From positions 1 to 64,000 of the IMG/VR virus record IMGVR_UViG_3300032116_000001: a stretch of DNA of 64,000 bases; one strand, 5' to 3'. This document shows, in pieces, positions 4,640 through 53,881 of this stretch (positions are counted from its first letter, which is position 1; each line of letters opens with the position of its first letter). The notes under the pieces were generated by a model. The model was not told where the DNA came from and did not search any database. It saw only the letters and a list, made by a program, of their open reading frames with translations. A program made the position numbers and the translations under genes.

Positions 4640-4673
4640 AATCCCCGATCTGAATTATGATCGGGGATTTTTT
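4640..4673 (+). terminator. intrinsic terminator
   Basis: AATCCCCGATC-loop-GATCGGGGATT followed by a T-run. Confidence 0.7.
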
Positions 4674-10927: not shown

Positions 10928-11221
10928 CATTAAAGTTTTTTACAGTCGGGCGGTTTTCCAAAGCTGCTTGGAATGAAATGGCAACTAAGTTTTTTGACCC
11001 TGGGGTTCAAACTACTATCCCGTCTTACACTCGCGCTGAGGCTTTGCGAACGAAAAAAAGAATGGCTAACAAGAAGATCAACATCATCAATGGTGATGGT
11101 GAAGTAGTTGAGTCTGTCAACTTATACGATCACGTTGTCGTCAGGAATGCCAAGGGTAAGATCGTAGGCTAAGCCACTAAAAAATCCCCTATAAAATCGT
11201 GGGGATTTTCCTATATAAATT

Positions 11222-16794: not shown

Positions 16795-17321
16795 AGATTA
16801 CTAAGTTTGCAGACATTCCTCAATACACCCGAGGGGCAAATTACGCAGTTAATGTTCCCTGGAGCCACTTGGAACGTGCGCTTGAAGCTTACAATGAGGG
16901 ATGCACTAATCTTTATCTGGACCCTGATTTCCAACGCGGTCATGTCTGGTCACTTGATAAGAAGATTGCTTATGTTACATACATTCTTCGCGGTGGTCAA
17001 GGCAGTCGTGAAATTAAGTTCAATCATCCTAATTGGTCAAATAGTGTCAAAGGAGATATGGTTCTTGTTGACGGTAAACAAAGACTTGAGGCTGTTCGTG
17101 GATTTCTTAGAGATGAATTCCCAATTTATGGTAGCTTGTTCAGTGAATTTACTGATGAATTGCGAATCATGCGATGCGATTTTGTTTTCCAAGTGAATGA
17201 TTTGAAAACCAGAGAGGAAGTTTTACAATGGTATCTTGACTTGAATAGCGGTGGTGTTGTTCACACCGAAGAAGAGCTTAATCGAGTCAGAGAAATGCTT
17301 GAAAAGGAAAAGGGGAATTAA
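16791..17321 (+). CDS. DUF262 (ParB/GmrSD N-terminal-like) domain protein
   Basis: LDPDFQRGHVWS and LVDGKQRL motifs; LNSGG. Confidence 0.85.
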   Translation: MKITKFADIPQYTRGANYAVNVPWSHLERALEAYNEGCTNLYLDPDFQRGHVWSLDKKIAYVTYILRGGQGSREIKFNHPNWSNSVKGDMVLVDGKQRLEAVRGFLRDEFPIYGSLFSEFTDELRIMRCDFVFQVNDLKTREEVLQWYLDLNSGGVVHTEEELNRVREMLEKEKGN

Positions 17322-17361
17322 AAAATCCCCTTTTTCAGAATAATGATCGGATATAAGAAGC

Positions 17362-17709
17362 ATGAGTGAAGATTTTTTGAACGGTTTTGCTATCGGTGCT
17401 GTTGCGATTATAGTTATTTGGGTTTGCTCGGCAATTAAGGCGAGTATTCCAAAACCTACAAACATGGGGTGGCTCGATGGATCGGGTGATTGGATTGAGG
17501 TGGTTCGTATCGGTCACTCAGGAGTGACTGTGCGACATTGTGGGTATAATTCACGTAATTCACACTGGACATTTAGGCGCTGTGCAGAAGATGCTGGCTG
17601 GCCTCTTTCCAAGATGCTTGATTACCTGGGCCTTCCCGATGAAAAGACACTCAAGGAAGCTGACATGACCATGGGTGAATGGCTTTCACAAAAAAATAAA
17701 AATTCTTGA
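17362..17709 (+). CDS. membrane-anchored protein, paralog of 18211..18567
   Basis: N-terminal TM; CAxDAGW...LGLPDExxLKExxMTxGEWL shared. Confidence 0.75.
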   Translation: MSEDFLNGFAIGAVAIIVIWVCSAIKASIPKPTNMGWLDGSGDWIEVVRIGHSGVTVRHCGYNSRNSHWTFRRCAEDAGWPLSKMLDYLGLPDEKTLKEADMTMGEWLSQKNKNS

Positions 17710-17777
17710 AACTTTTCAAAGGTGATCGCCGTATAACAAAAGAACATACACAAAGCAAAAGCTTTAAGGACACAATT

Positions 17778-17846
17778 ATGACTCGCCGATATCTTTCACT
17801 GCTAGGACTCTTATCGCTTTCTCTTGAGAAAGCGGCGATTAGCTGA
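17778..17846 (+). CDS. Leu-rich leader peptide MTRRYLSLLGLLSLSLEKAAIS
   Basis: AAGGAC SD; 7 Leu codons in 22 aa; upstream of a terminator and two tRNA-Leu genes. Confidence 0.8.
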   Translation: MTRRYLSLLGLLSLSLEKAAIS

Positions 17847-17908
17847 TAGATTTTGCGATCAGTGTTTAATCCCCGATTTCTCTCAAGGAGTCGGGGATTT
17901 TTGTTTTT
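17815..17908 (+). promoter_or_regulatory. transcription attenuator (1:2, 2:3 and 3:4 terminator helices)
   Basis: 1:2 CGCTTTCT/AGAAAGCG; 2:3 GAGAAAGCGGCGATTA/TAATCCCCGATTTCTC; 3:4 AATCCCCGATTTC/GGAGTCGGGGATT followed by TTTGTTTTT. Confidence 0.8.
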
Positions 17909-17919
17909 GCGTTTCACAT

Positions 17920-18004
17920 ACCGCTCTGGAGTAGCCAAACTTGCTACAGGCAACAGTCTTAGAAACTGTCTCTTTTCTGGGTTGGAATCCCAGGGGCGGT
18001 ACCA
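17920..18004 (+). tRNA. tRNA-Leu (anticodon TAG), atypical
   Basis: ACCGCTC/GGGCGGT-ACCA; ACAGT-CTTAGAA-ACTGT; T-loop TTGGAAT. Confidence 0.75.
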
Positions 18005-18055
18005 ATATTGACAATAGAATAGAGGAAAGAGAAAATAGATTTTCGAGTGATAAAT

Positions 18056-18142
18056 GCGGACGTGGCGGAATTGGTTTACGCGCTACTTTGAGATGGTAGT
18101 CCCCGATTGGGGGTGTGGGTTCGAGTCCCACCGTCCGCACCA
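18056..18142 (+). tRNA. tRNA-Leu (GAG)
   Basis: Full cloverleaf, long variable arm, CCA. Confidence 0.95.
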
Positions 18143-18210
18143 AAAATCCCTCAAATTTTCGAGCCGCGATTGTATATATGAATTATGAATGATTTTCATG
18201 GGAGTGCTCT

Positions 18211-18567
18211 TTGTCTAGTTGGCTGATCGGGTTGATTATCACGTTCTTTGTGATTTATTTTTTCTTCGGGAGTCAAAACCTTGATGATGAAGAAGAAGAT
18301 TTAGAGTACTTACATTCTTGGAAAGATGGAAATGGCTTTACGACTAAAGTAATCCAAATCGGTCACGATAAGATCGTTGTAGAAAATTTTAGCAGAAAGC
18401 GCGGGCGAAAAGTTCGGGTGTGGACTGTTGAAGAATGCGCCAAAGACGCAGGATGGTCAGTTGAAAAGATGAGAGATCATCTTGGCCTTCCCGATGAAAG
18501 CGCTTTAAAAGAAGTTGAAATGACTCTTGGCGAGTGGCTTCACGAAAAGAATCAACATCAAAGATAG
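18211..18567 (+). CDS. membrane-anchored protein, paralog of 17362..17709
   Basis: Paralogy; start uncertain. Confidence 0.7.
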   Translation: MSSWLIGLIITFFVIYFFFGSQNLDDEEEDLEYLHSWKDGNGFTTKVIQIGHDKIVVENFSRKRGRKVRVWTVEECAKDAGWSVEKMRDHLGLPDESALKEVEMTLGEWLHEKNQHQR

Positions 18568-18621
18568 AACCGATCAGTAAAAAATCCCCTGTTTTCGTGG
18601 GGGATTTTTGATAGATAAAGC

Positions 18622-19747: not shown

Positions 19748-19791
19748 TTAAAAATCCCCTGTTTTTCATGGGGGATTTTGATATATAAGGC

Positions 19792-20193: not shown

Positions 20194-20240
20194 CTAAAAA
20201 ATCCCCTGTTTTTCAATAGGGGATTTGATATATCAATTGT

Positions 20241-20397: not shown

Positions 20398-20698
20398 CGG
20401 GGCGTGGCGAAATGGCAGACGCAGGGGACTTATAAAATGAGCACTTGTTTGTGAAAGCTGCAAGTGAATGCAATCAAATTCGGTGAAACCTTAACAGTTA
20501 GGCTGATGGCAATACCGAGCCAAGCTAACTCAAAACAGAGTTAGAAGGTGTAGAGACTAGATGGTTGCTGCCTAAGTCGAAAGATATGGCAAAGGTATAG
20601 TCCAGACCACAAAATCCTTTGGGATCGTAGTGAAAGCTATAGTGGTATGAAAATCCCTTAGTAGCAATACTGTGTGGGTTCGAGTCCCACCGCCCCGA
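20398..20698 (+). tRNA. tRNA-Leu (TAA) interrupted by a group I intron
   Basis: Exons 20398-20431 and 20650-20698; joining them restores GGGGA-CTT^AAAA-TCCCT. Confidence 0.92.
20432..20649 (+). mobile_element. group I intron (tRNA-Leu UAA type, IC3-like), 218 nt, no ORF
   Basis: Inserted after the U of the anticodon, ends in G; P AAATTCGGTGAAA, Q AATACCGAGC, R GTAGAGACTAGATGG, S AAGGTATAGTCC. Confidence 0.9.
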
Positions 20699-21286: not shown

Positions 21287-21535
21287 ATGATCGATGACAA
21301 AAGAACTTCAGAATGTGTTATTCTTCATATTGAAGTTGATGTTGAGTACCCTGAAGGAATGCATCTTGGGGTTGTTCTATCTGGTTTGCAAAACAATGCG
21401 AAAATTGCCATTACTGAACTTGATGACGATAGGGTCCAAATCACAGCAAATAGAATCACAGCAGTTGAACATTTTGTTACTGGAGAAATTTTAGAAGATT
21501 ACCAGTGGAAAAAGAAAAAAGAATCTCCTCGATAA
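21287..21535 (+). CDS. hypothetical protein
   Basis: Promoter-like motif upstream. Confidence 0.6.
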   Translation: MIDDKRTSECVILHIEVDVEYPEGMHLGVVLSGLQNNAKIAITELDDDRVQITANRITAVEHFVTGEILEDYQWKKKKESPR

Positions 21536-23378: not shown

Positions 23379-23505
23379 ACTCCAAAAACATTCTCATTGA
23401 GGGAGAATTTAATCCCTCAATGAGAAAAAACAAAAAACTGCTAACAAAAAGCAGGTGATCGTCGTATAATAAGAGAAGAAACTGAAAAGCACAAAGAGCT
23501 ATATT

Positions 23506-23628
23506 ATGAATCATCTCTTATCGACGACAATATGTGGAACAACAGGAACCTCAACAAGAGGAATCCTTTCCCTTGGCGTTATCGGCAAGGATAGTGATTC
23601 TGATTCAGGAGAACCCATCGAATCGTAG
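23506..23628 (+). CDS. Gly/Ser/Thr-rich leader peptide (40 aa)
   Basis: MNHLLSTTICGTTGTSTRGILSLGVIGKDSDSDSGEPIES; run of GGA/ACA/TCA codons; upstream of a terminator and tRNA-Gly/Ser/Thr. Confidence 0.8.
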   Translation: MNHLLSTTICGTTGTSTRGILSLGVIGKDSDSDSGEPIES

Positions 23629-23689
23629 CTTTACTGTGATTACAGAACAAAGAGGCTCGATTCGATAAGATCGAGCCTCTTTTCTTTTT
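23617..23689 (+). promoter_or_regulatory. transcription attenuator (antiterminator overlapping the leader stop, plus terminator)
   Basis: 2:3 ATCGAATCG(T)AGCTTT/GAGGCTCGATTCGAT; 3:4 AAAGAGGCTCGAT/ATCGAGCCTCTTT followed by TCTTTTT. Confidence 0.8.
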
Positions 23690-23818
23690 AGATATGATGT
23701 CTGGGAAGAGAAAGATCGAATATTGAAAATTTCATACAGGTATAGATATAAAAGTGTTAGGGGGTGTTGGATCGATCTTTGATCGCAGGCCTCACCCCCT
23801 TGATCGAGACACATTTTC

Positions 23819-23892
23819 GCGAGATTGGTATATGGGTTGTGCCCTAGCCTTCCAAGCTAGAGAAAAGGGTTCGAATCCCTTATCTCGCTCCA
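23819..23892 (+). tRNA. tRNA-Gly (TCC)
   Basis: GCGAGAT/ATCTCGC-TCCA; CTAGC-CTTCCAA-GCTAG. Confidence 0.95.
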
Positions 23893-23943
23893 ATTTAAGA
23901 CACATTTCTTTGTGCTGCCAATGGGCAGCTTTCAAAAGAAAAC

Positions 23944-24030
23944 GGATGGGTGACAGAGCGATCTATTGTAGCGGTCTTGAAAACCGCCGTGCCAAAAGCA
24001 CCGTGGGTTTGAATCCCACCCCATCCTCCA
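23944..24030 (+). tRNA. tRNA-Ser (TGA)
   Basis: GGATGGG/CCCATCC-TCCA; long variable arm. Confidence 0.92.
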
Positions 24031-24128
24031 TTTTGTAACAAAATCATAAAATTCAAAGCAGGTGTAGCTCAGTGGTAGAGCGCCCGCCGCGAAGGTTGAT
24101 GGTTGCAATATCGATAAATAGATTATGT

Positions 24129-24545
24129 ATGGCAATAACAAAATACAAAGGAGCCGTCGGGCTAACTAATGTAATGGCCTGTCTTGTCAATCAAAAAGCA
24201 AAAATCTTTGTTCCAATAGACGAAGACTGTCAATATGACCTGGTGGTAGATTATCAAAATTATCTTTACAGAGTGCAAGTTAAATATGCTGAGGCAAAAA
24301 ATGGCAAGATCGTTGTAAAGACGCGCTCAACGAATAACTATTGTGAAATTCGTTATACTAAAGATCATTTTGACGTGATTGCTGTTTGGGACAATGTTGG
24401 CAAAAAAGCATATTTTATTTCATCGAATTTAATCACAGAAGGAATGACGGAAATGACCTTGAGATTAGATGCACCAAAAAACAATCAAACTAAAAACATA
24501 AGATTGGCTCGTAATTATGAGCAATTTAATGCTGCGGTCGCATAG
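24129..24545 (+). CDS. PD-(D/E)XK homing endonuclease (I-Ssp6803I/PDDEXK_5-like)
   Basis: YDLVVD...RVQVK...YTKDHFD...LRLDAPKNNQ. Confidence 0.85.
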   Translation: MAITKYKGAVGLTNVMACLVNQKAKIFVPIDEDCQYDLVVDYQNYLYRVQVKYAEAKNGKIVVKTRSTNNYCEIRYTKDHFDVIAVWDNVGKKAYFISSNLITEGMTEMTLRLDAPKNNQTKNIRLARNYEQFNAAVA

Positions 24546-24613
24546 TGGTCGATTGCACCTCTCTTGTAAAGAGGAACTCCACACCGTGGGTTCGAATCCC
24601 ACCCGTAGCTCCA
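24531..24613 (+). tRNA. tRNA-Thr (TGT)
   Basis: GCTGCGG/CCGTAGC-TCCA; CCTCT-CTTGTAA-AGAGG; overlaps the endonuclease stop. Confidence 0.9.
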
Positions 24614-31953: not shown

Positions 31954-32163
31954 ATGAACGATTCAAATCGCTTTGAAGTAATCAGCTCAGGTCCATACAA
32001 TTTGAAGATTGTTGCGCAAACTATGACTGAGTGCATGGATATGATTCGACGAAACTCTGACATGGTGGACTTCTGGGCAGTTTTAGACCATTCTACGAAA
32101 ACCGTGGTCGCTTTAAGCCAGGACTGGAAAGTCTTGCCAACATTCAAACCCGCAGTAAACTAA
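31954..32163 (+). CDS. hypothetical protein
   Basis: Promoter motif upstream. Confidence 0.6.
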   Translation: MNDSNRFEVISSGPYNLKIVAQTMTECMDMIRRNSDMVDFWAVLDHSTKTVVALSQDWKVLPTFKPAVN

Positions 32164-33443
32164 TGAAAGAATCTCGATATATTTTCGCTGACGTGAGCGC
32201 GAATAATAACAAGTTTTGGAACATCAAAATTGAACCAAACTTCACGGTCGTAACTTCGTGGGGCCGAGTCGGAGATAACGCACAATCAAAGGAATTTCCC
32301 CACGGAAGCCTTGCAGACGCAGAAAAGTTCTTCGATAGGAAATGCCGCGAAAAGGAACGAAAAGGATACGTTAAGCAAAGAGTTCTGATCGGAGAATACA
32401 CCACGCAAGATAACACTTCGCTTGCGTCAGTTGCCAAACAACAAATCAACACAAATAGCCCCGAATTAGATGAACTAATTGCCTTCCTGACTAAAGCAAA
32501 CGTTCATAACATTCTAACAGCAACAGCTATGGAATACGACACTTCAAAGGGAGTTTTTACAACGCCCCTCGGAGTTGTCACGAACGATGCCATTCAAGAT
32601 GCACGAAGCATCTTGGCATCAATGGGCCTTCTTGTGCATAATCAAGATTGGAACTCCCCCGATTGGAATTCGCTCTTGTCTATGTACCTTACTGCCATCC
32701 CTCAAAAGATTGGACGCAGAAAGCCAGACCCAAGAGAACTCTTCCCGAGCCTTCAAGCTATTCAAAATCAAAGCAAAATTCTTGACGACCTGGAAGCATC
32801 ATTCCAATCTGTCGTGAGCGCACCACTGACGCAGAAAGGGGATGACACAAACACGCCACAAGTGTTTGATGTGAAATTGCATCTTGTAGACGATCAAAGC
32901 ATAATTCGACGAATCAAAAACAAATACGACTCCACACGAAAGACCATGCACGCATCATATCATCTGGGGGTGAAACGAGTCTTTTCTGTCGAAATTAACG
33001 CGATGGCAAAGGCATATGGTGATCGGGGAAAGAACGTCGGCAACGTGATGGAACTCTGGCATGGGACACGAGCGGGGAACCTTTTGAGCATCCTTAAAGG
33101 CGGACTGCAAGTCCCACCCGCATCGAGCCCTCATGTGACGGGGAGAATGTTCGGGGATGGATTGTATTTTTCAGATCAGTCCACGAAAAGCCTCAATTAT
33201 GCCTATGGAGCAGCACCAGGACAAAGAGGAGGAATTGAATCGTCCACGTTCATGTTTCTCGCAGATGTAGCAATGGGACGCCCATTTGTCCCAACGTCCT
33301 ATACACGACCGTCAAAGTACCCCGTGCAAGGACATGATTCAATATTTGCAAAAGCAGGACAATCAGGCGTACACAATAATGAAATGATCGTATACACCAC
33401 CGATCAATGCAACCTCACCTACCTGGTTGAATTCGGAAACTAA
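32163..33443 (+). CDS. WGR-domain poly(ADP-ribose) polymerase (PARP)
   Basis: WGRVG; helical regulatory domain; LWHGT, GRMFGDGLYF, KSLNY, NEMIVY (H-Y-E triad). Confidence 0.92.
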   Translation: MKESRYIFADVSANNNKFWNIKIEPNFTVVTSWGRVGDNAQSKEFPHGSLADAEKFFDRKCREKERKGYVKQRVLIGEYTTQDNTSLASVAKQQINTNSPELDELIAFLTKANVHNILTATAMEYDTSKGVFTTPLGVVTNDAIQDARSILASMGLLVHNQDWNSPDWNSLLSMYLTAIPQKIGRRKPDPRELFPSLQAIQNQSKILDDLEASFQSVVSAPLTQKGDDTNTPQVFDVKLHLVDDQSIIRRIKNKYDSTRKTMHASYHLGVKRVFSVEINAMAKAYGDRGKNVGNVMELWHGTRAGNLLSILKGGLQVPPASSPHVTGRMFGDGLYFSDQSTKSLNYAYGAAPGQRGGIESSTFMFLADVAMGRPFVPTSYTRPSKYPVQGHDSIFAKAGQSGVHNNEMIVYTTDQCNLTYLVEFGN

Positions 33444-33492
33444 AAAAATCCCCCGTTATCAAAAGGGGGATTTGATATAATAAAATACCACA

Positions 33493-33786: not shown

Positions 33787-33831
33787 AAAAAATCCCCCTT
33801 TTTTCAAAAGGGGATTGAATATATAGAAGAG

Positions 33832-43482: not shown

Positions 43483-43850
43483 GTGACTGGGAACAAGAAA
43501 GGGGGAAGTAACTCCCTCTTTCTTTATGACTTTCCGTGATTATGCGCCACGATCATTAAAAATCCCCTATATCTTATATTCCAATCGGATATATAAGATA
43601 TAATGAAAACCAAACATGTTTTTCGAGTTTACCCCAAGAATGCAACATCTTCCGAGGATGCTTTGGTAATTGAGAAAACCATAAGCCCGAAATCTGTCCT
43701 TCGAGTAATGGGAAACCTTCTTGGCAAGTATAATGCTTCAGAAGTGGCTTTATTGAAATCCGAGGACAAATAAGACTTTTTTAACAAAAAGTCCCAAAAT
43801 CATAGGACGATTTTGTTTTTTGATCGTATAATAGATAAGGACACTTTATT

Positions 43851-43943
43851 ATGAAGACCCACACCACATCAAATACGAATATGGTCTTCACCCGACGCAA
43901 TTCCGCGACGGGCGTCCAACAACGCTGTCGGCGTTCCGCTTAA
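43851..43943 (+). CDS. Gln/Arg/Cys leader peptide MKTHTTSNTNMVFTRRNSATGVQQRCRRSA
   Basis: AAGGAC SD; CAA CAA CGC TGT CGG CGT codon run; upstream of tRNA-Gln x2, tRNA-Arg x2 and tRNA-Cys. Confidence 0.75.
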   Translation: MKTHTTSNTNMVFTRRNSATGVQQRCRRSA

Positions 43944-44032
43944 GTCGGGCTGACACGTTACCACCTGCAAGTAACTTCTTTTTCGAAGAATTAGCCCGCT
44001 CTCTGAGCGAGACGTCGATTATCATCTCGTGC

Positions 44033-44106
44033 TCGGGGATCGTCTAGAGGCAGGACTCTGGTCTCTGGAACCAGAAGCGGTGGTTCGAATCCATCTCTCC
44101 GAGCCA
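44033..44106 (+). tRNA. tRNA-Gln (CTG)
   Basis: TCGGGGA/TCTCCGA-GCCA; CTGGT-CTCTGGA-ACCAG. Confidence 0.93.
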
Positions 44107-44113
44107 GCTTCAC

Positions 44114-44199
44114 TGGGTCTTAGGCGAATTGGTAGAGCCGCCTGTCTTTGGAACAGGACTCCTGAAAAGGTGGAGGTTCGAATCCTCCCGACCCAGCCA
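44114..44199 (+). tRNA. tRNA-Gln (TTG) with enlarged variable arm
   Basis: CCTGT-CTTTGGA-ACAGG; GCCA end. Confidence 0.88.
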
Positions 44200-44271
44200 A
44201 TTAAAGGCTTTATGCATTTTGAAAAAATAATTAAAAAAGGCTTTCTTAACAGAAGTACATAATTAAAACGA

Positions 44272-45057
44272 GTGATTCAAACTTCCAATAAGAAAACAAG
44301 AGTAAAGCGCAGTCGAATTTGGACGATGCCTAAAGACGAGTTCGCTCAACTAGTGGCCTCAAGTCAAACTTATGTCGAAATTCTCCGAGCCATTAACTAC
44401 ACCATACGAGGAGGAGCTTTTCGAATTTTAAAAGAACGAATTGCGACAGAAATGATCGACGATTCACATATATTAAAGAATGGAAGGCAAACCATTTATG
44501 CCCATAGATTCAATACTCGGTCAGATGACGATATATTTTGCGAAAATTCTACATACAATAGTGGCCCTGCCCTGAAAAAGAGAATGATTAAGCTAGGCTT
44601 ACCTGAAGAATGCACAAAATGTGGGCTTGGTGCAACATGGAATGATGAACCTCTATCTCTGCAAGTAGACCATATCAATGGGGTGCGCAACGATAACAGA
44701 TTAGAGAATTTGAGGCTTCTGTGCCCAAATTGTCATTCTCAAACCGAAAATTTTGCTGGCAGAAAGTTGAACGCAAAAAACAAATCATGTCCAGAATGCT
44801 GCGCTAAGATCAGTGGATACCGTAAAGATCAGAGATGCCAATCTTGTGCCAATAAGATCAGGTCTAGAGAAATGCAACTAATATCAAAACCATCAAAAGA
44901 CGAGCTTCAAGATATGTTGTGGAAAATGCCCGCGACTAGGATTGCTAAGATATACAATGTGTCCGATAAAACAGTTGGTAATTGGGCTAAATCCTACAAA
45001 ATTGACAAACCGAGCCGTGGACACTGGGTCAAAAAAAATACTCCCCCCCCCTTGTAG
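44272..45057 (+). CDS. HNH homing endonuclease with C-terminal zinc-finger/HTH
   Basis: LQVDHINGVRNDNRLENLRLLCPNCHSQT; ATRIAKIYNVSDKTVGNW. Confidence 0.9.
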   Translation: MIQTSNKKTRVKRSRIWTMPKDEFAQLVASSQTYVEILRAINYTIRGGAFRILKERIATEMIDDSHILKNGRQTIYAHRFNTRSDDDIFCENSTYNSGPALKKRMIKLGLPEECTKCGLGATWNDEPLSLQVDHINGVRNDNRLENLRLLCPNCHSQTENFAGRKLNAKNKSCPECCAKISGYRKDQRCQSCANKIRSREMQLISKPSKDELQDMLWKMPATRIAKIYNVSDKTVGNWAKSYKIDKPSRGHWVKKNTPPPL

Positions 45058-45123
45058 CTTAATGGATAGAGCGCAGCACTTCGGATGCTGATGTTATGGG
45101 TTCGAGTCCTATCGAGGGGGCCA
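45048..45123 (+). tRNA. tRNA-Arg (TCG)
   Basis: CAGCA-CTTCGGA-TGCTG; overlaps the HNH stop. Confidence 0.9.
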
Positions 45124-45134
45124 AAATTTAAAAC

Positions 45135-45210
45135 ACGCCTGTAGCTCAGTGGATAGAGCATCAGCTTGCGGAGCTGAGGGTCGGAGGTTCGAACCCTCTC
45201 AGGCGTGCCA
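45135..45210 (+). tRNA. tRNA-Arg (GCG)
   Basis: TCAGC-TTGCGGA-GCTGA; GCCA end. Confidence 0.92.
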
Positions 45211-45216
45211 ATATAC

Positions 45217-45291
45217 GGCCACGTACCCAAATGGTTAAGGGCTCCCTCTGCAAAAGGGATGTTGCGAGTTCGATTCTCGCCGTGGCCTCCA
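45217..45291 (+). tRNA. tRNA-Cys (GCA)
   Basis: GGCCACG/CGTGGCC-TCCA; U73 discriminator. Confidence 0.95.
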
Positions 45292-47706: not shown

Positions 47707-47823
47707 GCTTTATATATCCGATTGTGCTACGGCAGAAAGGGGATTTTTTATGACTTTCTAAGGTTATGTGCCACGATCATAAAAAATCCCTTGCTTTTTG
47801 TGTTTCAAGCGGATATATAAGAT

Positions 47824-48300
47824 ATGTTGATTTTGCCTAAGTTTCACAGCCGATTTGGTGATAAGGGTTTTGCACGCACGCTAGGCAGGCTTATCAGATT
47901 TTATTTTTGGCCTGTTGCCTTTTTTGTCATTTCTCTTGTCTGCCGATTTCAGACTAACCATCATGCAGCGTTTATCTTTAGTGTAGCCACACTGGGAGTG
48001 GTAATCGTTCTGTGCGTTTTATCGGGGTTCGTTGCAAAACTTTCTGAGTCAAGCAATGAACAAGTAGATGCTTTTTGGGCTTTTCTTTCGCATACGGCAA
48101 AGGGCATTTCTGTTGGGTTTTCGCTTTCTGTTTTGAGTTTCATCTTGTGCGTGGCAAGCGTTGTAATTTATAACACCCAAGTCAATGACTTGGTGTCTAT
48201 AACTCTATCGTCTCTTATCGTGGCAAATCTTGTGGTAATGGGCTCTATCGTAAAAGAAACCTTTGAAGACATCGTGCTTGCTTTTAGGGAGCAAAAATAA
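47824..48300 (+). CDS. multi-pass membrane protein
   Basis: 4 TM; promoter motif. Confidence 0.7.
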   Translation: MLILPKFHSRFGDKGFARTLGRLIRFYFWPVAFFVISLVCRFQTNHHAAFIFSVATLGVVIVLCVLSGFVAKLSESSNEQVDAFWAFLSHTAKGISVGFSLSVLSFILCVASVVIYNTQVNDLVSITLSSLIVANLVVMGSIVKETFEDIVLAFREQK

Positions 48301-48394
48301 TGCGACACTATATCATTTTTATGACTTTCTACGATTGTGTGGCACGATCATAAAAAATCCCCCTAATAAAGCTGAGTAATCGGATATATAATGT

Positions 48395-48474
48395 GGGGCA
48401 AATAGCTCAGTAAAGACATATGGGAATGTAACAGTAGAGGTTTCCGCGTATGTTCAAATCCTGTTGCTCCACCA
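48395..48474 (+). ncRNA. tRNA-Ala-like mini RNA lacking an anticodon arm
   Basis: GGGGCAA/TTGCTCC-ACCA with G3:U70; own promoter. Confidence 0.55.
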
Positions 48475-48515
48475 AAAATCCCCTATATTTTCCGCGTTCA
48501 TGCCATATATAAACT

Positions 48516-48698
48516 ATGGCAAAATACACTGTCACCTGCTACAATCCTCACTGCGGCCAAAATGGTCAAGTCATCAATAAAATTGACGTTGACGAGGCTA
48601 ACGAAAATCTACTCGTAGAAAACTTTGGTCAAGGAGGAGAAGATGAAGAAGATTTTTGTGAAGAGTGCGGAATGTTAGGGGTTTTGGAAGAAGCCTAA
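48516..48698 (+). CDS. small Cys-containing protein
   Basis: Promoter motif; CxxxxC...CxxC. Confidence 0.65.
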   Translation: MAKYTVTCYNPHCGQNGQVINKIDVDEANENLLVENFGQGGEDEEDFCEECGMLGVLEEA

Positions 48699-48737
48699 AA
48701 CCATTTTTTGAGGAAAAAATCGAAGGAGAAAATCGAA

Positions 48738-49055
48738 GTGAACAACCAAACCGTAACAATCCCGCAGGTGGGCATGGGAGCCACTCAATGCGTCGGCTCT
48801 GACCGACGAGCGTATACAGTCGTTGAAATTATCAATGACCGAAAAATTGTCCTCCAGCGAGACAAGGTAAAGCGCATCGACTCGAACGGTTTTAGCACAG
48901 AACAAAAGTACTCTTATGAACCAAACCCCAATGGTCACGAAGTTGTTGTGACTTTACGCAAGAATGGACGATGGTGCGAGGTTGGAGAGGCCATCGACAA
49001 CGGAGTTCAATATGTAGTTGGGCATCGAAAAGAATACGACGACCCGCACTTCTAA
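48738..49055 (+). CDS. hypothetical phage protein
   Basis: AGGAG SD with GTG start; PQVGMGAT...SDRRAYTV...YDDPHF. Confidence 0.7.
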   Translation: MNNQTVTIPQVGMGATQCVGSDRRAYTVVEIINDRKIVLQRDKVKRIDSNGFSTEQKYSYEPNPNGHEVVVTLRKNGRWCEVGEAIDNGVQYVVGHRKEYDDPHF

Positions 49056-49192
49056 AACAAAAGCAAAAGACAATGGTATCTAAGAAAATGATGCCATTGT
49101 CTTTTGCGAAAAAATCGAAAAATCGTGGCACACAATCGCAGAAAGTCATAAAAAATCCCTTATCTTTGAGATTCTAATCGGATATATAAATT

Positions 49193-49405
49193 ATGAAGAA
49201 GTTTCTCCTTTTCGCTGGCGAATATACTCCCGAGGGAGGAATGAAAGATTTTCAGGCCTCTGATGACAATGTCGATGCTCTTTACAGAATTTTGTCTTAC
49301 GAAATGGTCAAGCATGATTGGCGATGGTGGCATATTGTTGATAGAGACACTATGAACATTGTTTCAGACAGCAAGTTCCCCGAAGATGGTCCGACCCGAG
49401 TGTAA
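49193..49405 (+). CDS. hypothetical protein, paralog of 49407..49604
   Basis: MKKFLLFAG...WWHIV shared. Confidence 0.75.
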   Translation: MKKFLLFAGEYTPEGGMKDFQASDDNVDALYRILSYEMVKHDWRWWHIVDRDTMNIVSDSKFPEDGPTRV

Positions 49406-49406
49406 A

Positions 49407-49604
49407 ATGAAGAAGTTTCTCCTTTTCGCTGGCTCTTTCCCAAATGAGGGGCAAGGCTGGCGAGATTATAAGTTCACAGCAGATACGATAGGGGAGGTTC
49501 ACGCCTTCCTTGCCAACTACATGGTAAACGAAATGGTGGGCTGGTGGCATATTGTATCTGCGGAAACGATGGAAATTGTAGATAATAACAAGCCGATTCA
49601 TTGA
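49407..49604 (+). CDS. hypothetical protein, paralog of 49193..49405
   Basis: Paralogy. Confidence 0.75.
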   Translation: MKKFLLFAGSFPNEGQGWRDYKFTADTIGEVHAFLANYMVNEMVGWWHIVSAETMEIVDNNKPIH

Positions 49605-49723
49605 TAAGGGCAATTCGTTGAAAAGCGAAAAGTCCTTTTTTCACGCCTTAATGATCGTGCCGCACAATCGTAGAAAGTCATAAAAAATGGGGGCCAATCC
49701 CCCATTTTTTATCTTAGTCCTTT

Positions 49724-50599
49724 TTAGGCCGTCGCCAGTTCTTTCTTTGCTTCCAGGCTCTTGGCCTTGCCTCGGCCCATAATGAAGTTTGCGGCTTTCC
49801 CCGCAAGTCCTGCGGCCTGCACGACCATTTTGGGGTCGTCATTCAGAACCTTGAGCCAGCCCTGAATATAGGCCTGGGTGTTCTCGGTGTCATTGTCGAT
49901 GCCGATTTCTTGGCAGAGAAAGGCGGCTGTGAGTTCTGCTACCAGTTCCTCGCGGCTGTAACCTTCCTTGTCAAGCGTTGAGATTTGCATGACTTCGGGT
50001 CGAGCCAATCGGGATTCGTGGCCCGTCGCGTGACCAAGTTCATGGAATAAGGTCGCGTAATAGGCTTCGGAACTGACAAAAGATTCGATAATAGGCATTT
50101 GGACCCAATCGCCATAAGGCGAATAACAGGCACGATTTCCACCGTGACGAATCTCAGGCACCAGCGGCATTTCTTGGACCACTTCCTCACAACGTTCGAT
50201 GCGGCGATTGTCTTTCAGTTCCTCAATCGGCGGCAGGTCGAGCCCTTCGGTTTGCTCCACATTGAAAACATAAAATTGCTTCAATACGGGGTAGGAACCT
50301 GTCTTGCCAGTCTTATCATCCTCATAACTCACCTGCTTCCAGAACACAATCGGTGTGCCCTTCTCGCCCTTCTTGATTCGCCCGCCCATCTTGTTGATTT
50401 GATTGCAAGTCATCCAGCGCGGGTCGGCAAAGGTAGACATTGACAAAAGCAGAAGGTTGAGCCCGCTATACTTGGTTCCGCTACTGGGGTTGCAGGGTCG
50501 AATCACCGACCAGGGTCGCTTCCAAGCAACGTTTCCGCTCTTTAGGCCCTCGATGATGGTGTTGGTTACGATTTCGTAGACTTCGGACTTCTTCTTCAT
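49724..50599 (-). CDS. ardC: ArdC-like antirestriction protein (ssDNA-binding + zincin-like)
   Basis: WKRPW, YSGLN, IKKGEKG, VFNVEQ, YYATLFHELGHATGH, YSREELVAEL, AYIQGW. Confidence 0.92.
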   Translation of the reverse strand: MKKKSEVYEIVTNTIIEGLKSGNVAWKRPWSVIRPCNPSSGTKYSGLNLLLLSMSTFADPRWMTCNQINKMGGRIKKGEKGTPIVFWKQVSYEDDKTGKTGSYPVLKQFYVFNVEQTEGLDLPPIEELKDNRRIERCEEVVQEMPLVPEIRHGGNRACYSPYGDWVQMPIIESFVSSEAYYATLFHELGHATGHESRLARPEVMQISTLDKEGYSREELVAELTAAFLCQEIGIDNDTENTQAYIQGWLKVLNDDPKMVVQAAGLAGKAANFIMGRGKAKSLEAKKELATA

Positions 50600-50738
50600 T
50601 AGTCTGCCTCTCTTTATATATCCGATTAGACTACGATAGAAAGGGGATTTTTTATGGCTTTCTGAGATTATGGGCCACGATCATTAAAAATCCCCTTTTC
50701 AAGTAAATTCATATAATATAATAGAAAGAAAGGCAAAA

Positions 50739-50906
50739 TTCGCCCGAATTAAATATCGGATTAATGAAGCGAACACATGAATAAATCATGTGGTGACATT
50801 GAAAATAAAGAGGCCGTAAAGATAAGACTTGGCATCCAAGTCAATGCCGTGAAGCCAAGGGCCAACGACATCTGGTGGAGCCTTACCACCACCGAGGCGA
50901 AAAATT
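50739..50906 (+). ncRNA. putative structured ncRNA, copy B (related to 26489..26634)
   Basis: Shared end blocks with copy A. Confidence 0.55.
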
Positions 50907-50960
50907 ACTTGACAATCGGAAAAATCCCCCTTTTCCACTAACACAATCGGATATATAAGC

Positions 50961-51064
50961 AGGTGTCCAGGGGGCGGTGAAAGTCCGCAAGGCGGCTGCA
51001 GAGTCATGAATCTGCAGTGCGGCTGGTTTCCTCTGCGCTTGCGCAAGACCACCCTGGCGAGCCT
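50961..51064 (+). ncRNA. GC-rich structured RNA / 5' leader
   Basis: CCAGGG/CCCTGG, GCGG/CCGC, CTGCAGA/TCTGCAG and TGCGC/GCGCA helices directly after a promoter. Confidence 0.5.
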
Positions 51065-51079
51065 TCACAAGAGAGAAAT

Positions 51080-51292
51080 ATGCACGAGTTTGGTATAACT
51101 TTCCAAAACATCCATGGCGAAACATATGACAGCCCCGAATATGTTGGTCTTACGCTGCCGTTTCGCCCAAATGTTGGTGATGAAATCCTGATTGTGGGGG
51201 CAGGAGGAAAATCCTACAGAGTCTTGAAAGTTGAATATTGCGCTGGGCCATCGTTTGGTGACTTTCTTCTCACCGTCGAACCCGTGGTGTAA
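51080..51292 (+). CDS. hypothetical protein
   Basis: LPFRPNVGDEI. Confidence 0.6.
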   Translation: MHEFGITFQNIHGETYDSPEYVGLTLPFRPNVGDEILIVGAGGKSYRVLKVEYCAGPSFGDFLLTVEPVV

Positions 51293-51333
51293 AAAATCCC
51301 CTATATCTTTTCATCACAAAAGATATAACAAGT

Positions 51334-51570
51334 ATGCTGGAACAGCTGACTCTTGAACATCACGGCGACTTTCATTGCGTGCGTGAGTTTTGGGATTGTG
51401 AATGTGATGATGATTACATTCGGGGCAATGATGACCACAAGTGCGAAAAGTGCGGCATTGAACGCGATGATGCGCCAAACTCTCGACTGACCGAAGTGAT
51501 TGAACGCTATCCCGATTTGGAGAACGTTCCCTGGGTCATTGACCAAGCGTCCAAGAGCTTCATTCACTAA
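51334..51570 (+). CDS. small zinc-binding protein
   Basis: FWDCEC...CEKCG...PNSR. Confidence 0.7.
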   Translation: MLEQLTLEHHGDFHCVREFWDCECDDDYIRGNDDHKCEKCGIERDDAPNSRLTEVIERYPDLENVPWVIDQASKSFIH

Positions 51571-51665
51571 AGGTTCAAACAAAAAAGAGGGCATTGCCCT
51601 CTTTTTTATAACTTTCCATGATTATGGGCCACGATCATTAAAAATGGAAACAAAAAAATGAGACC

Positions 51666-51848
51666 CTATAAGGGCCTCTCGGAGATTTCTTTCTTCCATT
51701 CGGTAATGGTTCGATACCATCCTGGGTACGTATCGGTTTTCCATCCGCCTTGGTATCTAAAGATATTACAAACCGCCACCCAGCCGTGACCATTGTGATA
51801 GCCAATTTGCTTCGAGCCGTCTGACAAAACCGTGGTTTGGATTCTCAT
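51666..51848 (-). CDS. hypothetical protein
   Basis: Coupled to 51845..52057. Confidence 0.55.
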   Translation of the reverse strand: MRIQTTVLSDGSKQIGYHNGHGWVAVCNIFRYQGGWKTDTYPGWYRTITEWKKEISERPL

Positions 51849-52057
51849 TGCGACTTTGCATTGCTGCGAACTTGGCAGCAGTGACAGGGAAAAAACATGT
51901 TATTCACCAAAATCATAAGAATGGCGACATTAAGCCAATCTTGAGTATCAAGTGGAATGCCCAGCGAGAAAACAGAATTACACAGCACAAGAAGAGCCAA
52001 CGGGATGAGAGTGATTGTGTTATTGATGATATTGTTCTTGATGGTCGAAAAACTCAC
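51845..52057 (-). CDS. small membrane protein
   Basis: Reverse promoter motif, GTG start. Confidence 0.65.
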   Translation of the reverse strand: MSFSTIKNNIINNTITLIPLALLVLCNSVFSLGIPLDTQDWLNVAILMILVNNMFFPCHCCQVRSNAKSQ

Positions 52058-52146
52058 ACTTTATATATCCGATTAGACCACGAAAAACAAGGGATTTTTC
52101 AATAATCGTGACACATAATCTCAGAAAGTTATAAAAAATCCGCTTC

Positions 52147-52587: not shown

Positions 52588-52627
52588 ACTTTATATATCC
52601 GATTAGGCCATGAAAAACAAGGGATTT

Positions 52628-53841: not shown

Positions 53842-53881
53842 TCTTTATATATCCGATTAGAACACGAAAGAAAAGGGATTT

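What the first reader, a model, noticed from the sequence alone, without database searches (positions are those of the whole stretch)
17720..18142. Leu attenuator with complete 1:2 / 2:3 / 3:4 architecture upstream of tRNA-Leu(TAG) and tRNA-Leu(GAG)
The leader MTRRYLSLLGLLSLSLEKAAIS uses CTT, CTG, CTA, CTC, TTA, CTT, CTT, covering all four CTN codons read by the two downstream tRNAs. Segment 1 (17815-17822, in the Ser/Leu codons at the end of the Leu run) pairs with segment 2 (17827-17834). Segment 2 extended (17826-17841) can instead pair with segment 3 (17867-17882). Segments 3:4 plus TTTGTTTTT form an intrinsic terminator ending 11 nt before the first tRNA. A ribosome stalled on the early Leu codons would mask segment 1 and allow antitermination, the same geometry as enterobacterial leuL.
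Basis: partly seen in the sequence, partly recalled or inferred. Interest (0 to 1): 0.92.

Follow-up and report, generated by a model that had tools for sequence, protein, structure and literature searches.

The report
Codon-matched leader attenuators before phage tRNAs
A giant phage appears to switch three of its tRNA gene clusters on through tiny upstream reading frames rich in the codons those tRNAs read, a form of control known for amino-acid synthesis genes that I could not find reported for tRNA genes.

Summary
A 22-codon ORF (17778-17846) has 7 Leu codons. It is followed by the 1:2 hairpin, a 14/16 2:3 complement, a 14-bp terminator with a T-run, and tRNA-Leu(GAG). The supposed tRNA-Leu(TAG) is only a sub-threshold tRNA-like element.

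The new evidence is that this locus is one of three in the window, which is nt 1-64000 of a 378-kb phage contig.
- All three share a promoter-like box (GATCG..CGTATAAY) and the same SD-N7-ATTATGA start.
- Each small ORF is enriched, in its open frame only, for codons read by the tRNAs just downstream.
  - Locus 1: CTN codons, then tRNA-Leu.
  - Locus 2 (23506-23628): GGA/ACA/TCA codons, then tRNA-Gly(TCC), Ser(TGA), Thr(TGT).
  - Locus 3 (43851-43943): ..QQRCRR.., then tRNA-Gln x2, Arg x2, Cys.
- Combined P is 1e-9 against phage codon usage and 5.5e-5 against all small ORFs.

Folding the nascent RNA with ribosome footprints gives clean switches in loci 1 and 2. Locus 3 has no canonical terminator.

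Best reading: ribosome-mediated attenuation gives demand-driven, self-limiting tRNA transcription. All evidence is computational. The only relatives found are at least 98% identical, so covariation could not be tested. Confidence is about 0.65.

The parts
17720..17739 (+). Locus 1 promoter-like box AGGTGATCGCCGTATAACAA (-10-like TATAAC at 17732-37). The start site of about 17744 is inferred.
   Evidence: The 20-nt motif occurs exactly twice in the window and in the whole 378-kb contig. The core GATCG(N0-3)CGTATAAY occurs three times, each before a leader ORF.
17766..17770 (+). Shine-Dalgarno AAGGA, 7 nt before the leader ATG.
   Evidence: Direct reading. The same SD-N7-ATTATGA context is present at all three loci.
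17778..17846 (+). Locus 1 leader ORF: 22 codons, 7 Leu, of which 6 are CTN.
   Evidence: Enrichment appears only in the open frame. 6/21 CTN gives P = 4.6e-4 against phage gene codon usage. It lies in the top 0.19% of small ORFs.
17814..17834 (+). Hairpin 1:2 (anti-antiterminator; possibly a pause hairpin).
   Evidence: -10.4 kcal/mol. P(1:2) = 0.98 without a ribosome.
17826..17882 (+). Antiterminator: segment 2 (17826-41) pairs with segment 3 (17867-82), with hairpin X (17842-63) stacked at the apex.
   Evidence: I2 (14/16 complementary). (-19.1 kcal/mol). It forms with P = 0.7-1.0 only when a ribosome A site is on codons 1-12, or only on Leu11/12 if the RNA starts at 17720.
17868..17908 (+). 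Intrinsic terminator: 14-bp stem 17868-81/17886-99 plus the T-run TTTTTGTTTTT.
   Evidence: -20.1 kcal/mol. The 5' arm begins with the phage's AATCCCC promoter box but lacks the TATATAA element.
17920..18004 (+). tRNA-like element with anticodon-type loop CTTAGAA (UAG). Not validated as a tRNA.
   Evidence: It is 100% identical in strains L007 and L013.
18008..18036 (+). Sigma-70-like match TTGACA-N17-GAAAAT between the tRNA-like element and tRNA-Leu(GAG). A possible bypass promoter.
   Evidence: This is a consensus match only.
18056..18142 (+). tRNA-Leu(GAG), the regulated gene of locus 1.
   Evidence: 57.6 bits.
23453..23472 (+). Locus 2 promoter-like box AGGTGATCGTCGTATAATAA.
23506..23628 (+). 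Locus 2 leader ORF: 40 codons with 6 Gly, 7 Ser and 6 Thr (GGA x4, ACA x4, TCA x2, TCG x2, ACG x1).
   Evidence: 13/39 cognate codons gives P = 1.7e-6. The open frame has 13 cognate codons against at most 6 in the other five frames.
23617..23666 (+). Locus 2 antiterminator. The last three codons, the stop and the next few nt (23617-35) pair with the terminator 5' arm and loop (23649-66).
   Evidence: P = 0.98 by default. It is lost only when the ribosome A site reaches about the last 6 codons or the stop.
23649..23689 (+). Locus 2 intrinsic terminator: 14-bp stem plus TCTTTTT.
   Evidence: -21.1 kcal/mol.
23819..24613 (+). Locus 2 regulated tRNAs: Gly(TCC) 23819-92, Ser(TGA) 23944-24030 and Thr(TGT) 24531-613. 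A PD-(D/E)XK endonuclease ORF (24072-24545) lies between Ser and Thr.
   Evidence: No main-class promoter lies between 23019 and 24689.
43822..43832 (+). Locus 3 promoter-like box GATCGTATAAT (shortened version).
43851..43943 (+). Locus 3 leader ORF: 30 codons, C-terminal ..V-Q-Q-R-C-R-R-S-A. All 5 Arg are CGN, both Gln are CAA, and Cys is TGT.
   Evidence: 8/29 cognate codons gives P = 3.5e-3.
43927..44019 (+). Locus 3 long hairpin (-37.7 kcal/mol). Its 5' strand overlaps the last codons of the leader. No canonical terminator was found.
44033..45291 (+). Locus 3 tRNAs: Gln(CTG), Gln(TTG), Arg(TCG), Arg(GCG) and Cys(GCA). An HNH endonuclease ORF (44272-45057) lies in between.

Best explanation
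The finding is one of three paralogous control units in front of phage tRNA operons. They act as ribosome-mediated (leader-peptide) transcription attenuators.

Shared layout (shown): each unit starts with its own promoter-like box (GATCG..CGTATAAY), which differs from the phage's main promoter class. A short 5' UTR follows, with a Shine-Dalgarno sequence and a conserved ATTATGA start. Then comes a small ORF whose codons are the ones decoded by the tRNAs encoded just downstream.

Locus 1, the finding (structures shown, function inferred):
- With no ribosome, the 1:2 hairpin and the terminator form, and transcription stops 11 nt before the tRNA-like element.
- A ribosome slowed on the early Leu codons (Leu6-Leu12, most robustly Leu11/12) covers segment 1 and the 5' part of the leader. 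Segment 2 then pairs with segment 3 before segment 4 is made, and RNA polymerase reads into the tRNA genes.
- A ribosome that reaches the end of the ORF covers segment 2, and the terminator forms.

Locus 2: the antiterminator is the default structure. It is melted only by a ribosome reaching the last codons or the stop.

Net effect (inferred): when decoding of these particular codons is slow, more phage tRNA is transcribed. Once the tRNA pool is restored, transcription shuts itself off. This would be negative-feedback control of decoding capacity during infection.

Shown: sequence anatomy, alternative helices and their energies, the three-fold paralogy, the codon-tRNA match. Inferred: promoter activity and start site, translation of the ORFs, termination and readthrough, and the physiological logic.
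For: - Anatomy at the stated coordinates is confirmed.
- Helix energies are 1:2 -10.4, 2:X:3 -19.1 and 3:4 -20.3 kcal/mol. The antiterminator is therefore competitive if it forms first.
- Nascent RNA folded to 17885 with footprint masks, 5' end assumed at 17744: P(2:3) = 0.00 with no ribosome, 0.7-1.0 with the A site on codons 1-12, and 0.0 from codon 14 to the stop. The result is robust to a 3' footprint edge of +10 to +16.
- With a longer 5' end (17720), the switch remains at Leu11/Leu12, with P = 0.95-0.98.
- The 20-nt box occurs only at 17720 and 23453 in the 378-kb contig. The box plus SD plus ATTATGA pattern occurs only at the three loci.
- Cognate-codon enrichment is 6/21, 13/39 and 8/29, giving binomial P of 4.6e-4, 1.7e-6 and 3.5e-3 (Fisher combined 1e-9). 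Empirical tail fractions among 1065 small ORFs are 0.0019, 0.0094 and 0.025 (Fisher combined 5.5e-5).
- The cross-matrix is diagonal-dominant: each leader matches its own tRNA set best.
- The enrichment is confined to the open frame in loci 1 and 2.
- It extends to synonymous choice: 24 of 31 codons are cognate against 15.8 expected, P = 0.0016.
- Locus 2 has a strong terminator and an antiterminator that overlaps the stop codon.
- No main-class promoter lies between any leader and its tRNAs.
- Intrinsic terminators are enriched in this genome: 36 found against 18.7 +/- 4.5 expected.
- In strain L007, the only differences in the roughly 200 nt from the box to the terminator tail are a synonymous CTC>CTA at Leu11, a loop base of hairpin X, and a T insertion in the 5' UTR.
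- The same codon-match scan on an unrelated phage locus with 17 tRNAs (L004) gives nothing beyond chance.
Against: - Everything is in silico. Promoter activity, start site, leader translation and termination are all untested.
- At equilibrium the full-length RNA forms the terminator whatever the ribosome position (P = 0.95), so the switch must be kinetic.
- The width of the permissive zone depends on the assumed 5' end.
- The 2:3 complementarity is significant against shuffles (p = 0.0025). It is only 8th of 96 against natural hairpins in the window.
- Any tandem pair of similar hairpins would show 2:3 complementarity. 17815-40 and 17874-99 are a 73% direct repeat (D2).
- A sigma-70-like match at 18008-36 could transcribe tRNA-Leu(GAG) independently.
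- Locus 3 has no canonical intrinsic terminator, and its structure changes do not give a clear switch.
- One permissive-zone codon is TTA, which the downstream tRNAs do not read. Leu14 and Leu16 lie in the non-permissive zone.
- Binomial P values can be inflated. An out-of-frame ORF inside a real gene (21339-21494) also scores 4e-5 for TTG before tRNA-Leu(CAA).
- No diverged relatives were found, so there is no covariation test.
- The host and the transcribing polymerase are unknown.
Confidence: 0.65

Rival explanations
1. The cognate-codon leaders do sense decoding speed but act by another route than intrinsic termination. Candidates are Rho-dependent polarity, or control of precursor processing or stability at the structured RNA between leader and tRNAs.
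For: Locus 3 has the conserved promoter box, start context and matching codons. Instead of a canonical terminator it has a long -37.7 kcal/mol hairpin overlapping the ORF end. In loci 1 and 2 the terminator always wins at equilibrium.
Against: Loci 1 and 2 carry textbook intrinsic terminators (14 bp plus a T-run). Their antiterminators overlap the ORF ends exactly as an attenuator needs.
Confidence: 0.15
2. The promoter box, small ORF and terminator form independent mini-genes that encode micropeptides or small RNAs. The tRNAs are transcribed from separate promoters downstream, and the codon-tRNA match is coincidence or hitch-hiking of a mobile cassette.
For: Each unit has its own promoter-like box and, in loci 1 and 2, a strong terminator, as a stand-alone gene would. 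A sigma-70-like TTGACA-N17-GAAAAT lies between the terminator and tRNA-Leu(GAG). Homing endonuclease ORFs in the clusters show that these regions are mobile.
Against: The three peptides are unrelated in sequence, yet each matches its own downstream tRNA set (diagonal-dominant matrix; combined P 5.5e-5 to 1e-9). The match reaches synonymous codon choice. The antiterminator strands overlap the stop codons. No phage-type promoter lies between leader and tRNAs.
Confidence: 0.12
3. The structure is the 3' UTR and terminator of the upstream gene (17362-17709). It ends with a promoter-box-derived hairpin of the kind common in this genome. The Leu-rich ORF and the 2:3 complement arise by chance from a tandem duplication of that hairpin.
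For: The terminator 5' arm begins with the AATCCCC box that marks about 75 promoters, and several of those also form AATCCCC...GGGGATT hairpins. 17815-40 and 17874-99 are a 73% direct repeat. The anti-duplex energy is not extreme among natural hairpins.
Against: This does not explain the 20-nt box shared with locus 2, the conserved SD/ATTATGA start, or the two other codon-matched leaders. It also does not explain the footprint-dependent switch.
Confidence: 0.05
4. The leader RNAs are protein-sequestering small RNAs, for example CsrA/RsmA-type sponges with repeated GGA motifs, ended by a terminator.
For: The locus 2 leader contains several (A/G)GGA motifs, and locus 1 has GGA in the terminator loop (direct reading).
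Against: No Rfam CsrB/RsmY/RsmZ-type hit appeared at E up to 1-10. The GGA motifs are in frame as Gly codons alongside in-frame ACA/TCA enrichment. Loci 1 and 3 have few GGA motifs.
Confidence: 0.03

Closest known systems
Enterobacterial leu operon leader (leuL; Rfam RF00512 Leu_leader) and the trp, his, thr, ilv and phe biosynthetic-operon attenuators
   Same: Short SD-led ORF rich in regulatory codons. Mutually exclusive 1:2, 2:3 and 3:4 helices. An intrinsic terminator just upstream of the regulated genes. A stalled ribosome masks segment 1, and a terminating ribosome masks segment 2. 3:4 is the most stable helix, so the choice is kinetic. (The description of the known systems is from my own knowledge; the locus geometry is.)
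   Different: The regulated genes are tRNAs, not biosynthetic enzymes, and the unit is in a phage. There is no sequence or structure match to any Rfam leader family. The Leu codons are dispersed (7 of 22, mixed CTN plus one TTA) rather than a run of one codon. The stop codon lies after segment 2, not between segments 1 and 2. Loci 2 and 3 have mixed-amino-acid leaders matching multi-tRNA operons.
pheST attenuator (pheM leader) of E. coli
   Same: Leader-peptide attenuation in which the supply of a charged tRNA feeds back on a component of the translation apparatus for the same amino acid (own knowledge).
   Different: It controls an aminoacyl-tRNA synthetase, not the tRNA itself. It is a single-amino-acid leader in a cellular genome.
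T-box riboswitches
   Same: Transcription antitermination that responds to the state of a specific tRNA through a codon-like specifier (own knowledge).
   Different: A T-box binds uncharged tRNA directly and needs no translation. It has conserved stem I and T-box sequences and regulates synthetase, biosynthesis or transport genes. No T-box hit was listed here at E up to 10.
Phage tRNA gene clusters (T4, T5 and other large phages)
   Same: tRNA genes clustered on one strand, interspersed with small ORFs and homing endonuclease genes. The tRNA-Leu(GAG) is 74-79% identical to tRNA-Leu genes of T5-like phages and Ralstonia phage RsoM2USA.
   Different: From my own knowledge, those clusters are described as promoter-driven and processed from precursors. 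I found no report of codon-matched leader ORFs or attenuators in front of them.

Membership tests
Ribosome-mediated (leader-peptide) transcription attenuators | A short ORF with a ribosome-binding site, placed at the 5' end of the transcript. | tested here: met
   AAGGA-N7-ATG at 17766-17780. The same SD-N7-ATTATGA context is present at all three loci, each 20-45 nt after a shared -10-like box. The start site itself is inferred.
Ribosome-mediated (leader-peptide) transcription attenuators | The ORF is enriched in codons whose decoding reports the regulated function. | tested here: met
   6/21, 13/39 and 8/29 codons are cognate to the downstream tRNAs. Enrichment is frame-specific and the cross-matrix is diagonal-dominant.
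Ribosome-mediated (leader-peptide) transcription attenuators | An intrinsic terminator between the leader and the regulated genes. | tested here: met
   Met for locus 1 (17868-17908) and locus 2 (23649-23689). Not met for locus 3.
Ribosome-mediated (leader-peptide) transcription attenuators | An antiterminator that excludes the terminator, whose formation depends on ribosome position in the ORF. | tested here: met
   Footprint-constrained folding of nascent RNA gives switches in loci 1 and 2. The full-length RNA at equilibrium always favours the terminator. Locus 3 is inconclusive.
Ribosome-mediated (leader-peptide) transcription attenuators | Readthrough responds to translation of the leader and to cognate charged-tRNA supply. 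| not testable with these tools
   This needs reporter fusions, coupled in vitro transcription-translation, or transcript end mapping.
Ribosome-mediated (leader-peptide) transcription attenuators | Conservation and covariation of the helices and regulatory codons in relatives. | tested here: inconclusive
   Only strains at least 98% identical were found. The three differences in L007 are compatible with the model but too few to test it.
Rfam leader families (Leu_leader RF00512, Thr_leader RF00506, and others) | Covariance-model score at or above the gathering threshold. | tested here: not met
   No Leu_leader hit at E up to 10 in locus 1. The only Thr_leader hit is on the wrong strand over the locus 2 terminator, at 22.7 bits against 55.
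PyrR binding site (RF00515) | Covariance-model score at or above the gathering threshold. | tested here: not met
   27.3 bits against 54, E = 0.26. The match reflects only the generic three-hairpin terminator layout.
T-box riboswitch | Stem I with specifier loop plus the conserved T-box antiterminator sequence. | tested here: not met
   No T-box family hit was listed at E up to 10 over 17300-18600.
tRNA (RF00005), for the element at 17920-18004 | Cloverleaf scoring above threshold with a consistent anticodon assignment. | tested here: not met
   25.0 bits against 29, in a local alignment of model positions 8-63. ARAGORN at default settings is negative and its relaxed calls disagree with each other.

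The most novel reading that the evidence does not exclude
A phage encodes a codon-specific demand sensor for its own tRNA genes. Each tRNA operon is preceded by a dedicated leader ORF whose codon set mirrors the anticodons of that operon. Two of these leaders mix amino acids (Gly/Ser/Thr and Gln/Arg/Cys). Phage tRNA transcription would then be induced when those codons are decoded slowly and would shut itself off once the tRNAs accumulate. Slow decoding could come from a codon-usage mismatch with the host, or from loss or cleavage of host tRNAs during infection or defence. This would be the first leader-peptide attenuation of tRNA genes, and a feedback homeostat of decoding capacity.
Probability: 0.5. 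Interest if true: 0.92.

Novelty: new variant of a known kind. Interest (0 to 1): 0.85.

Why it matters
Why large phages carry tRNA genes, and how they use them, is still debated; the ideas I know of include codon-usage compensation, replacing degraded host tRNAs, and escaping anticodon nucleases. Those tRNA genes are generally treated as constitutively expressed cargo.

A codon-matched leader attenuator would show that a phage measures decoding speed codon by codon and tunes its own tRNA supply in response. It would also extend leader-peptide attenuation, a textbook mechanism, to a new class of target (the tRNA itself, closing a direct feedback loop) and to leaders that integrate several amino acids.

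The idea is directly testable with short synthetic constructs in a laboratory E. coli strain. It also suggests a simple search rule for other genomes: a small ORF enriched in the codons of the tRNAs downstream of a terminator.

Tried and rejected
**Comparative analysis**
- The window is IMG/VR contig 3300032116_000001, nt 1-64000.
- BLAST against 50,697 phage records hit only the tRNA-Leu(GAG).
- Homologues of the flanking gene gave near-identical strains only: L007 98%, L013 about 100%, L009-L011 and L042 identical.
- More distant homologues have no tRNA or leader nearby (L012, L014-L022).
- Two informative contigs could not be fetched.
- The last protein search found nothing new.
- No covariation test was therefore possible.

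**Collection scans**
- The tRNA 3' half found unrelated phages with other Leu isoacceptors and no leader.
- The 16-nt promoter box and the full box/SD/start pattern found only this contig plus chance hits, none followed by tRNAs.

**Other tRNAs in the window**
- No cognate-rich leader was found in front of Asp, Thr(GGT), Met, Arg(TCT) or Lys.
- The TTG-rich ORF 21339-21494 before tRNA-Leu(CAA) lies out of frame inside a plausible 82-aa gene that has its own promoter. I reject it as a by-product of coding sequence. It also shows that binomial P values overstate significance for overlapping frames.

**Folding**
- Equilibrium folding of the full-length leader with footprints always gives the terminator. 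It is not informative for a kinetic switch, so I replaced it with truncated nascent RNAs.

**Other ideas set aside**
- CsrA-sponge idea: no support.
- tRNA-Leu(TAG): could not be validated.
- Locus 3 terminator: none found.
- The same codon-match scan on an unrelated tRNA-rich phage locus (L004) was negative.
Full report
**Source and context**

The window is nt 1-64000 of IMG/VR contig 3300032116_000001, a 378,848-bp phage genome. It encodes an rIIA-like protein and many small genes, mostly on the + strand. It carries 15 tRNA genes that both ARAGORN and Rfam call. No close relative exists among 50,697 deposited phage genomes; only the tRNA-Leu(GAG) matched.

**The observation**

- ORF 17778-17846 encodes the stated 22 residues, with Leu codons CTT, CTG, CTA, CTC, TTA, CTT, CTT. 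An AAGGA sits 7 nt before the ATG.
- Segments 1 (17815-22) and 2 (17827-34) form a perfect hairpin (-10.4 kcal/mol).
- 17826-41 is 14/16 complementary to 17867-82. With the small hairpin 17842-63 stacked on top, this antiterminator is worth -19.1 kcal/mol.
- The terminator 17868-81/17886-99 (14 bp, -20.1 kcal/mol) is followed by a T-run. It ends 11 nt before the next element.
- tRNA-Leu(GAG) at 18056-18142 is solid (57.6 bits).

The 'tRNA-Leu(TAG)' at 17920-18004 is not validated.
- ARAGORN misses it at default settings and gives contradictory identities at relaxed thresholds.
- Rfam scores it 25.0 bits against a threshold of 29, without the acceptor stem.
- It has an acceptor stem, A73-CCA, a T arm and a loop CTTAGAA, but an aberrant D region and a short variable region.
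- I call it a tRNA-like element.

**Is locus 1 alone more than chance?**

Moderately.
- The ORF is 3rd of 810 small ATG ORFs for Leu fraction.
- The leader fold has z = -4.2.
- The 2:3 duplex beats all but 5 of 2000 shuffles.
- Among 96 natural hairpin-plus-T-run sites in the window it ranks only 8th for upstream complementarity.
- Segments 1:2 and 3:4 are a 73% direct repeat, as any tandem pair of related hairpins would be.

On this locus alone I would have been cautious.

**The genome's promoter grammar**

Flanks of the tRNAs revealed a strongly conserved main promoter. It has an AAAAATCCCC box with (G)GATATATAA exactly 28 nt downstream. There are about 75 copies in the window, one before almost every gene. 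The box pattern gave 98 matches against 31 +/- 5 expected.

The terminator's 5' arm starts with such an AATCCCC box but lacks the TATATAA. Several true promoters also form AATCCCC...GGGGATT hairpins.

No main-class promoter lies between gene A's promoter (about 17324) and 18145. Unless an unrecognised promoter is used, the tRNAs must therefore be reached through the terminator.

**The decisive finding: three loci, not one**

Upstream of the strong terminator at 23649-82 lies a 20-nt box nearly identical to 17720-39 (AGGTGATCGYCGTATAAYAA). It occurs only at these two places in the window and in the whole contig.

A shortened version, GATCGTATAAT, sits at 43822. The combination of box, SD and ATTATGA start occurs only at these three sites in the 378-kb contig. 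Hits elsewhere in IMG/VR are at the chance level and have no tRNAs nearby.

Each box is followed by a small ORF, then tRNAs.

| Locus | Leader ORF | Codon content | Downstream tRNAs |
|---|---|---|---|
| 1 | 17778-17846 (22 codons) | 6 CTN of 7 Leu | tRNA-like (UAG loop), Leu(GAG) |
| 2 | 23506-23628 (40 codons) | 6 Gly, 7 Ser, 6 Thr; GGA x4, ACA x4, TCA x2 | Gly(TCC), Ser(TGA), Thr(TGT) |
| 3 | 43851-43943 (30 codons) | ends ..V-Q-Q-R-C-R-R-S-A; all five Arg CGN, both Gln CAA, Cys TGT | Gln(CTG), Gln(TTG), Arg(TCG), Arg(GCG), Cys(GCA) |

In locus 2, residues 6-19 read S-T-T-I-C-G-T-T-G-T-S-T-R-G.

**Statistics of the match**

The loci were defined by the motif, not by codon content. Each has one ORF at the conserved start. 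The codon sets follow from the downstream anticodons by standard wobble.

| Locus | Cognate codons | Binomial P (phage gene codon usage) | Tail fraction among 1065 small ATG ORFs |
|---|---|---|---|
| 1 | 6/21 | 4.6e-4 | 0.0019 |
| 2 | 13/39 | 1.7e-6 | 0.0094 |
| 3 | 8/29 | 3.5e-3 | 0.025 |
| Fisher combined | | 1e-9 | 5.5e-5 |

- Each leader scores highest with its own tRNA set: 6, 13 and 8 on the diagonal against 0-4 off it.
- The enrichment is confined to the open frame in loci 1 and 2 (6 against at most 2; 13 against at most 6). It is weaker in locus 3 (8 against 4-7).
- It extends to synonymous choice: 24 of 31 codons cognate against 15.8 expected, P = 0.0016.
- In an unbiased scan of all small ORFs upstream of tRNAs, the locus 2 leader ranks first. 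Locus 3 ranks third and locus 1 sixth.
- The intruder at rank 2 (21339-21494) is out of frame inside a plausible 82-aa gene. It shows that the binomial null is too lenient for overlapping frames. I therefore give more weight to the empirical figure.
- The same scan on an unrelated phage locus with 17 tRNAs finds nothing beyond chance.

**Mechanism tests by folding**

With the complete leader at equilibrium, the terminator always forms (P = 0.95), whatever the ribosome position. From my own knowledge the same is true of trp, where 3:4 is also the most stable helix. The relevant question is what segment 3 does before segment 4 exists.

Locus 1, nascent RNA to 17885:
- With a 5' end at the inferred start (17744): no ribosome gives P(2:3) = 0.00. 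An A site on codons 1-12 (including Leu6, 8, 9, 11 and 12) gives 0.7-1.0. Codon 14 onward, including the stop, gives 0.0. This is stable for a 3' footprint edge of +10 to +16.
- If the RNA starts at 17720, extra 5' sequence competes for segment 2. Only Leu11/12 then give 2:3 (P = 0.95-0.98).
- This is the three-state logic of classical attenuators: untranslated gives termination, stalled in the Leu run gives readthrough, fully translated gives termination.

Locus 2:
- The antiterminator (23617-35 with 23649-66) covers the last three codons and the stop.
- It is present by default (P = 0.98). It is lost only when the A site reaches about the last six codons.
- This is a two-state version: any delay of the ribosome gives readthrough.

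Locus 3:
- It has no canonical terminator.
- A -37.7 kcal/mol hairpin overlaps the ORF end.
- I could not derive a clear switch.

**Relatives**

- Only near-identical strains were retrievable.
- In L007, the flanking gene is 92% identical in nucleotides. The block from 17710 through gene A' is 94-100% identical segment by segment, so it reads as a recombination block rather than evidence of selection.
- The only differences in the roughly 200 nt from the box to the terminator tail are a T insertion in the 5' UTR, CTC>CTA at Leu11 (synonymous, still CTN), and a loop base of hairpin X.
- These differences are compatible with the model but too few to test it.
- Distant homologues of the flanking protein sit in unrelated, tRNA-free contexts.

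**Interpretation**

The best explanation (confidence about 0.65) is ribosome-mediated attenuation of phage tRNA operons by codon-matched leader ORFs. It would give demand-driven, self-limiting tRNA synthesis.

Rivals:
- The leaders sense decoding but act through Rho or RNA processing (0.15; favoured for locus 3).
- They are independent mini-genes, with the tRNAs made from downstream promoters such as the sigma-70-like match at 18008-36 (0.12).
- The structure is a mere 3' UTR and terminator with a chance ORF (0.05).
- It is a protein-sponge small RNA (0.03).

**Comparison with known systems**

It works like the enterobacterial leu, trp, his and thr attenuators, and in logic like the pheST attenuator. 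It is not a member of any Rfam leader family, nor of the PyrR or T-box families.

It differs in four ways:
- the target is tRNA genes, so the product feeds straight back on the sensor;
- the host genome is a phage;
- the regulatory codons are dispersed and mixed;
- two of the leaders combine several amino acids to match multi-tRNA operons.

Four full-text searches found no report of leader-peptide attenuation of tRNA genes, in phages or otherwise. This is absence of evidence within the held library only.

**Verdict**

I classify it as a new variant of a known mechanism. It is of high interest and can be tested with short synthetic constructs.

Noticed in passing
window-wide, e.g. 1935, 13622, 21653, 28385, 35963, 59030 (+) and 47745-58382 (-): A highly conserved phage promoter motif: aaaAATCCCC, then about 18 nt, then (cG)GATATATAA at a fixed +28 spacing. 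There are about 75 copies, one before almost every gene. In many copies the ATG lies only 3-5 nt after the TATATAA, which suggests leaderless or near-leaderless mRNAs.
   Followed up: partly
4640-4669, 11183-11215, 17313-17330, 19753-19775, 20200-20225, 33447-33473, 33791-33816: Some promoter boxes carry GGGGATT in the spacer. AATCCCC...GGGGATT plus a T-run then forms a hairpin that could act as a terminator, possibly in both directions, fused to the next promoter.
   Followed up: no
48395-48474 (+): A second tRNA-like gene lies directly between two promoters. It has an acceptor-like stem ending in CCACCA and D/T-arm-like motifs. ARAGORN at default settings and Rfam both miss it. ARAGORN at a very low threshold reports a 4-base anticodon.
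   Followed up: partly
24058-24100 and 24072-24545; 44272-45057 (+): An apparent 5' half of a tRNA abuts a PD-(D/E)XK endonuclease ORF between tRNA-Ser and tRNA-Thr. An HNH endonuclease ORF sits between the Gln and Arg tRNAs. Both look like homing-endonuclease traffic inside the tRNA clusters.
   Followed up: partly
20421-20624 (+): Rfam group I catalytic intron hit above threshold (58.2 bits against 50). The interrupted gene was not identified.
   Followed up: no
32163-33443 (+): A 426-aa protein with WGR, PARP regulatory and PARP catalytic domains (E = 2e-27 for the catalytic domain). This is a eukaryote-like poly(ADP-ribose) polymerase architecture in a phage.
   Followed up: no
17362-17709 and 18211-18567 (+): The Leu locus is bracketed by two paralogous small genes (49% identical; N-terminal hydrophobic segment; conserved C-terminal CA-DAGW / LGLPDE motifs). 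Distant homologues occur in unrelated high-GC elements without tRNAs.
   Followed up: partly
17894-17903 and 18141-18150: The terminator tail GGGATTTTTG is perfectly complementary to CAAAAATCCC, which spans the last two bases of tRNA-Leu(GAG) and the 8 nt that follow it. A precursor spanning both tRNAs could be closed by a 10-bp helix. About 0.2 such matches are expected by chance in this region (I11).
   Followed up: no
23683-23818 (+): The 136 nt between the locus 2 terminator and tRNA-Gly fold into stable hairpins (-37.7 kcal/mol), including GGGGGTG...CACCCCC. They occupy the position that the tRNA-like element holds in locus 1.
   Followed up: no
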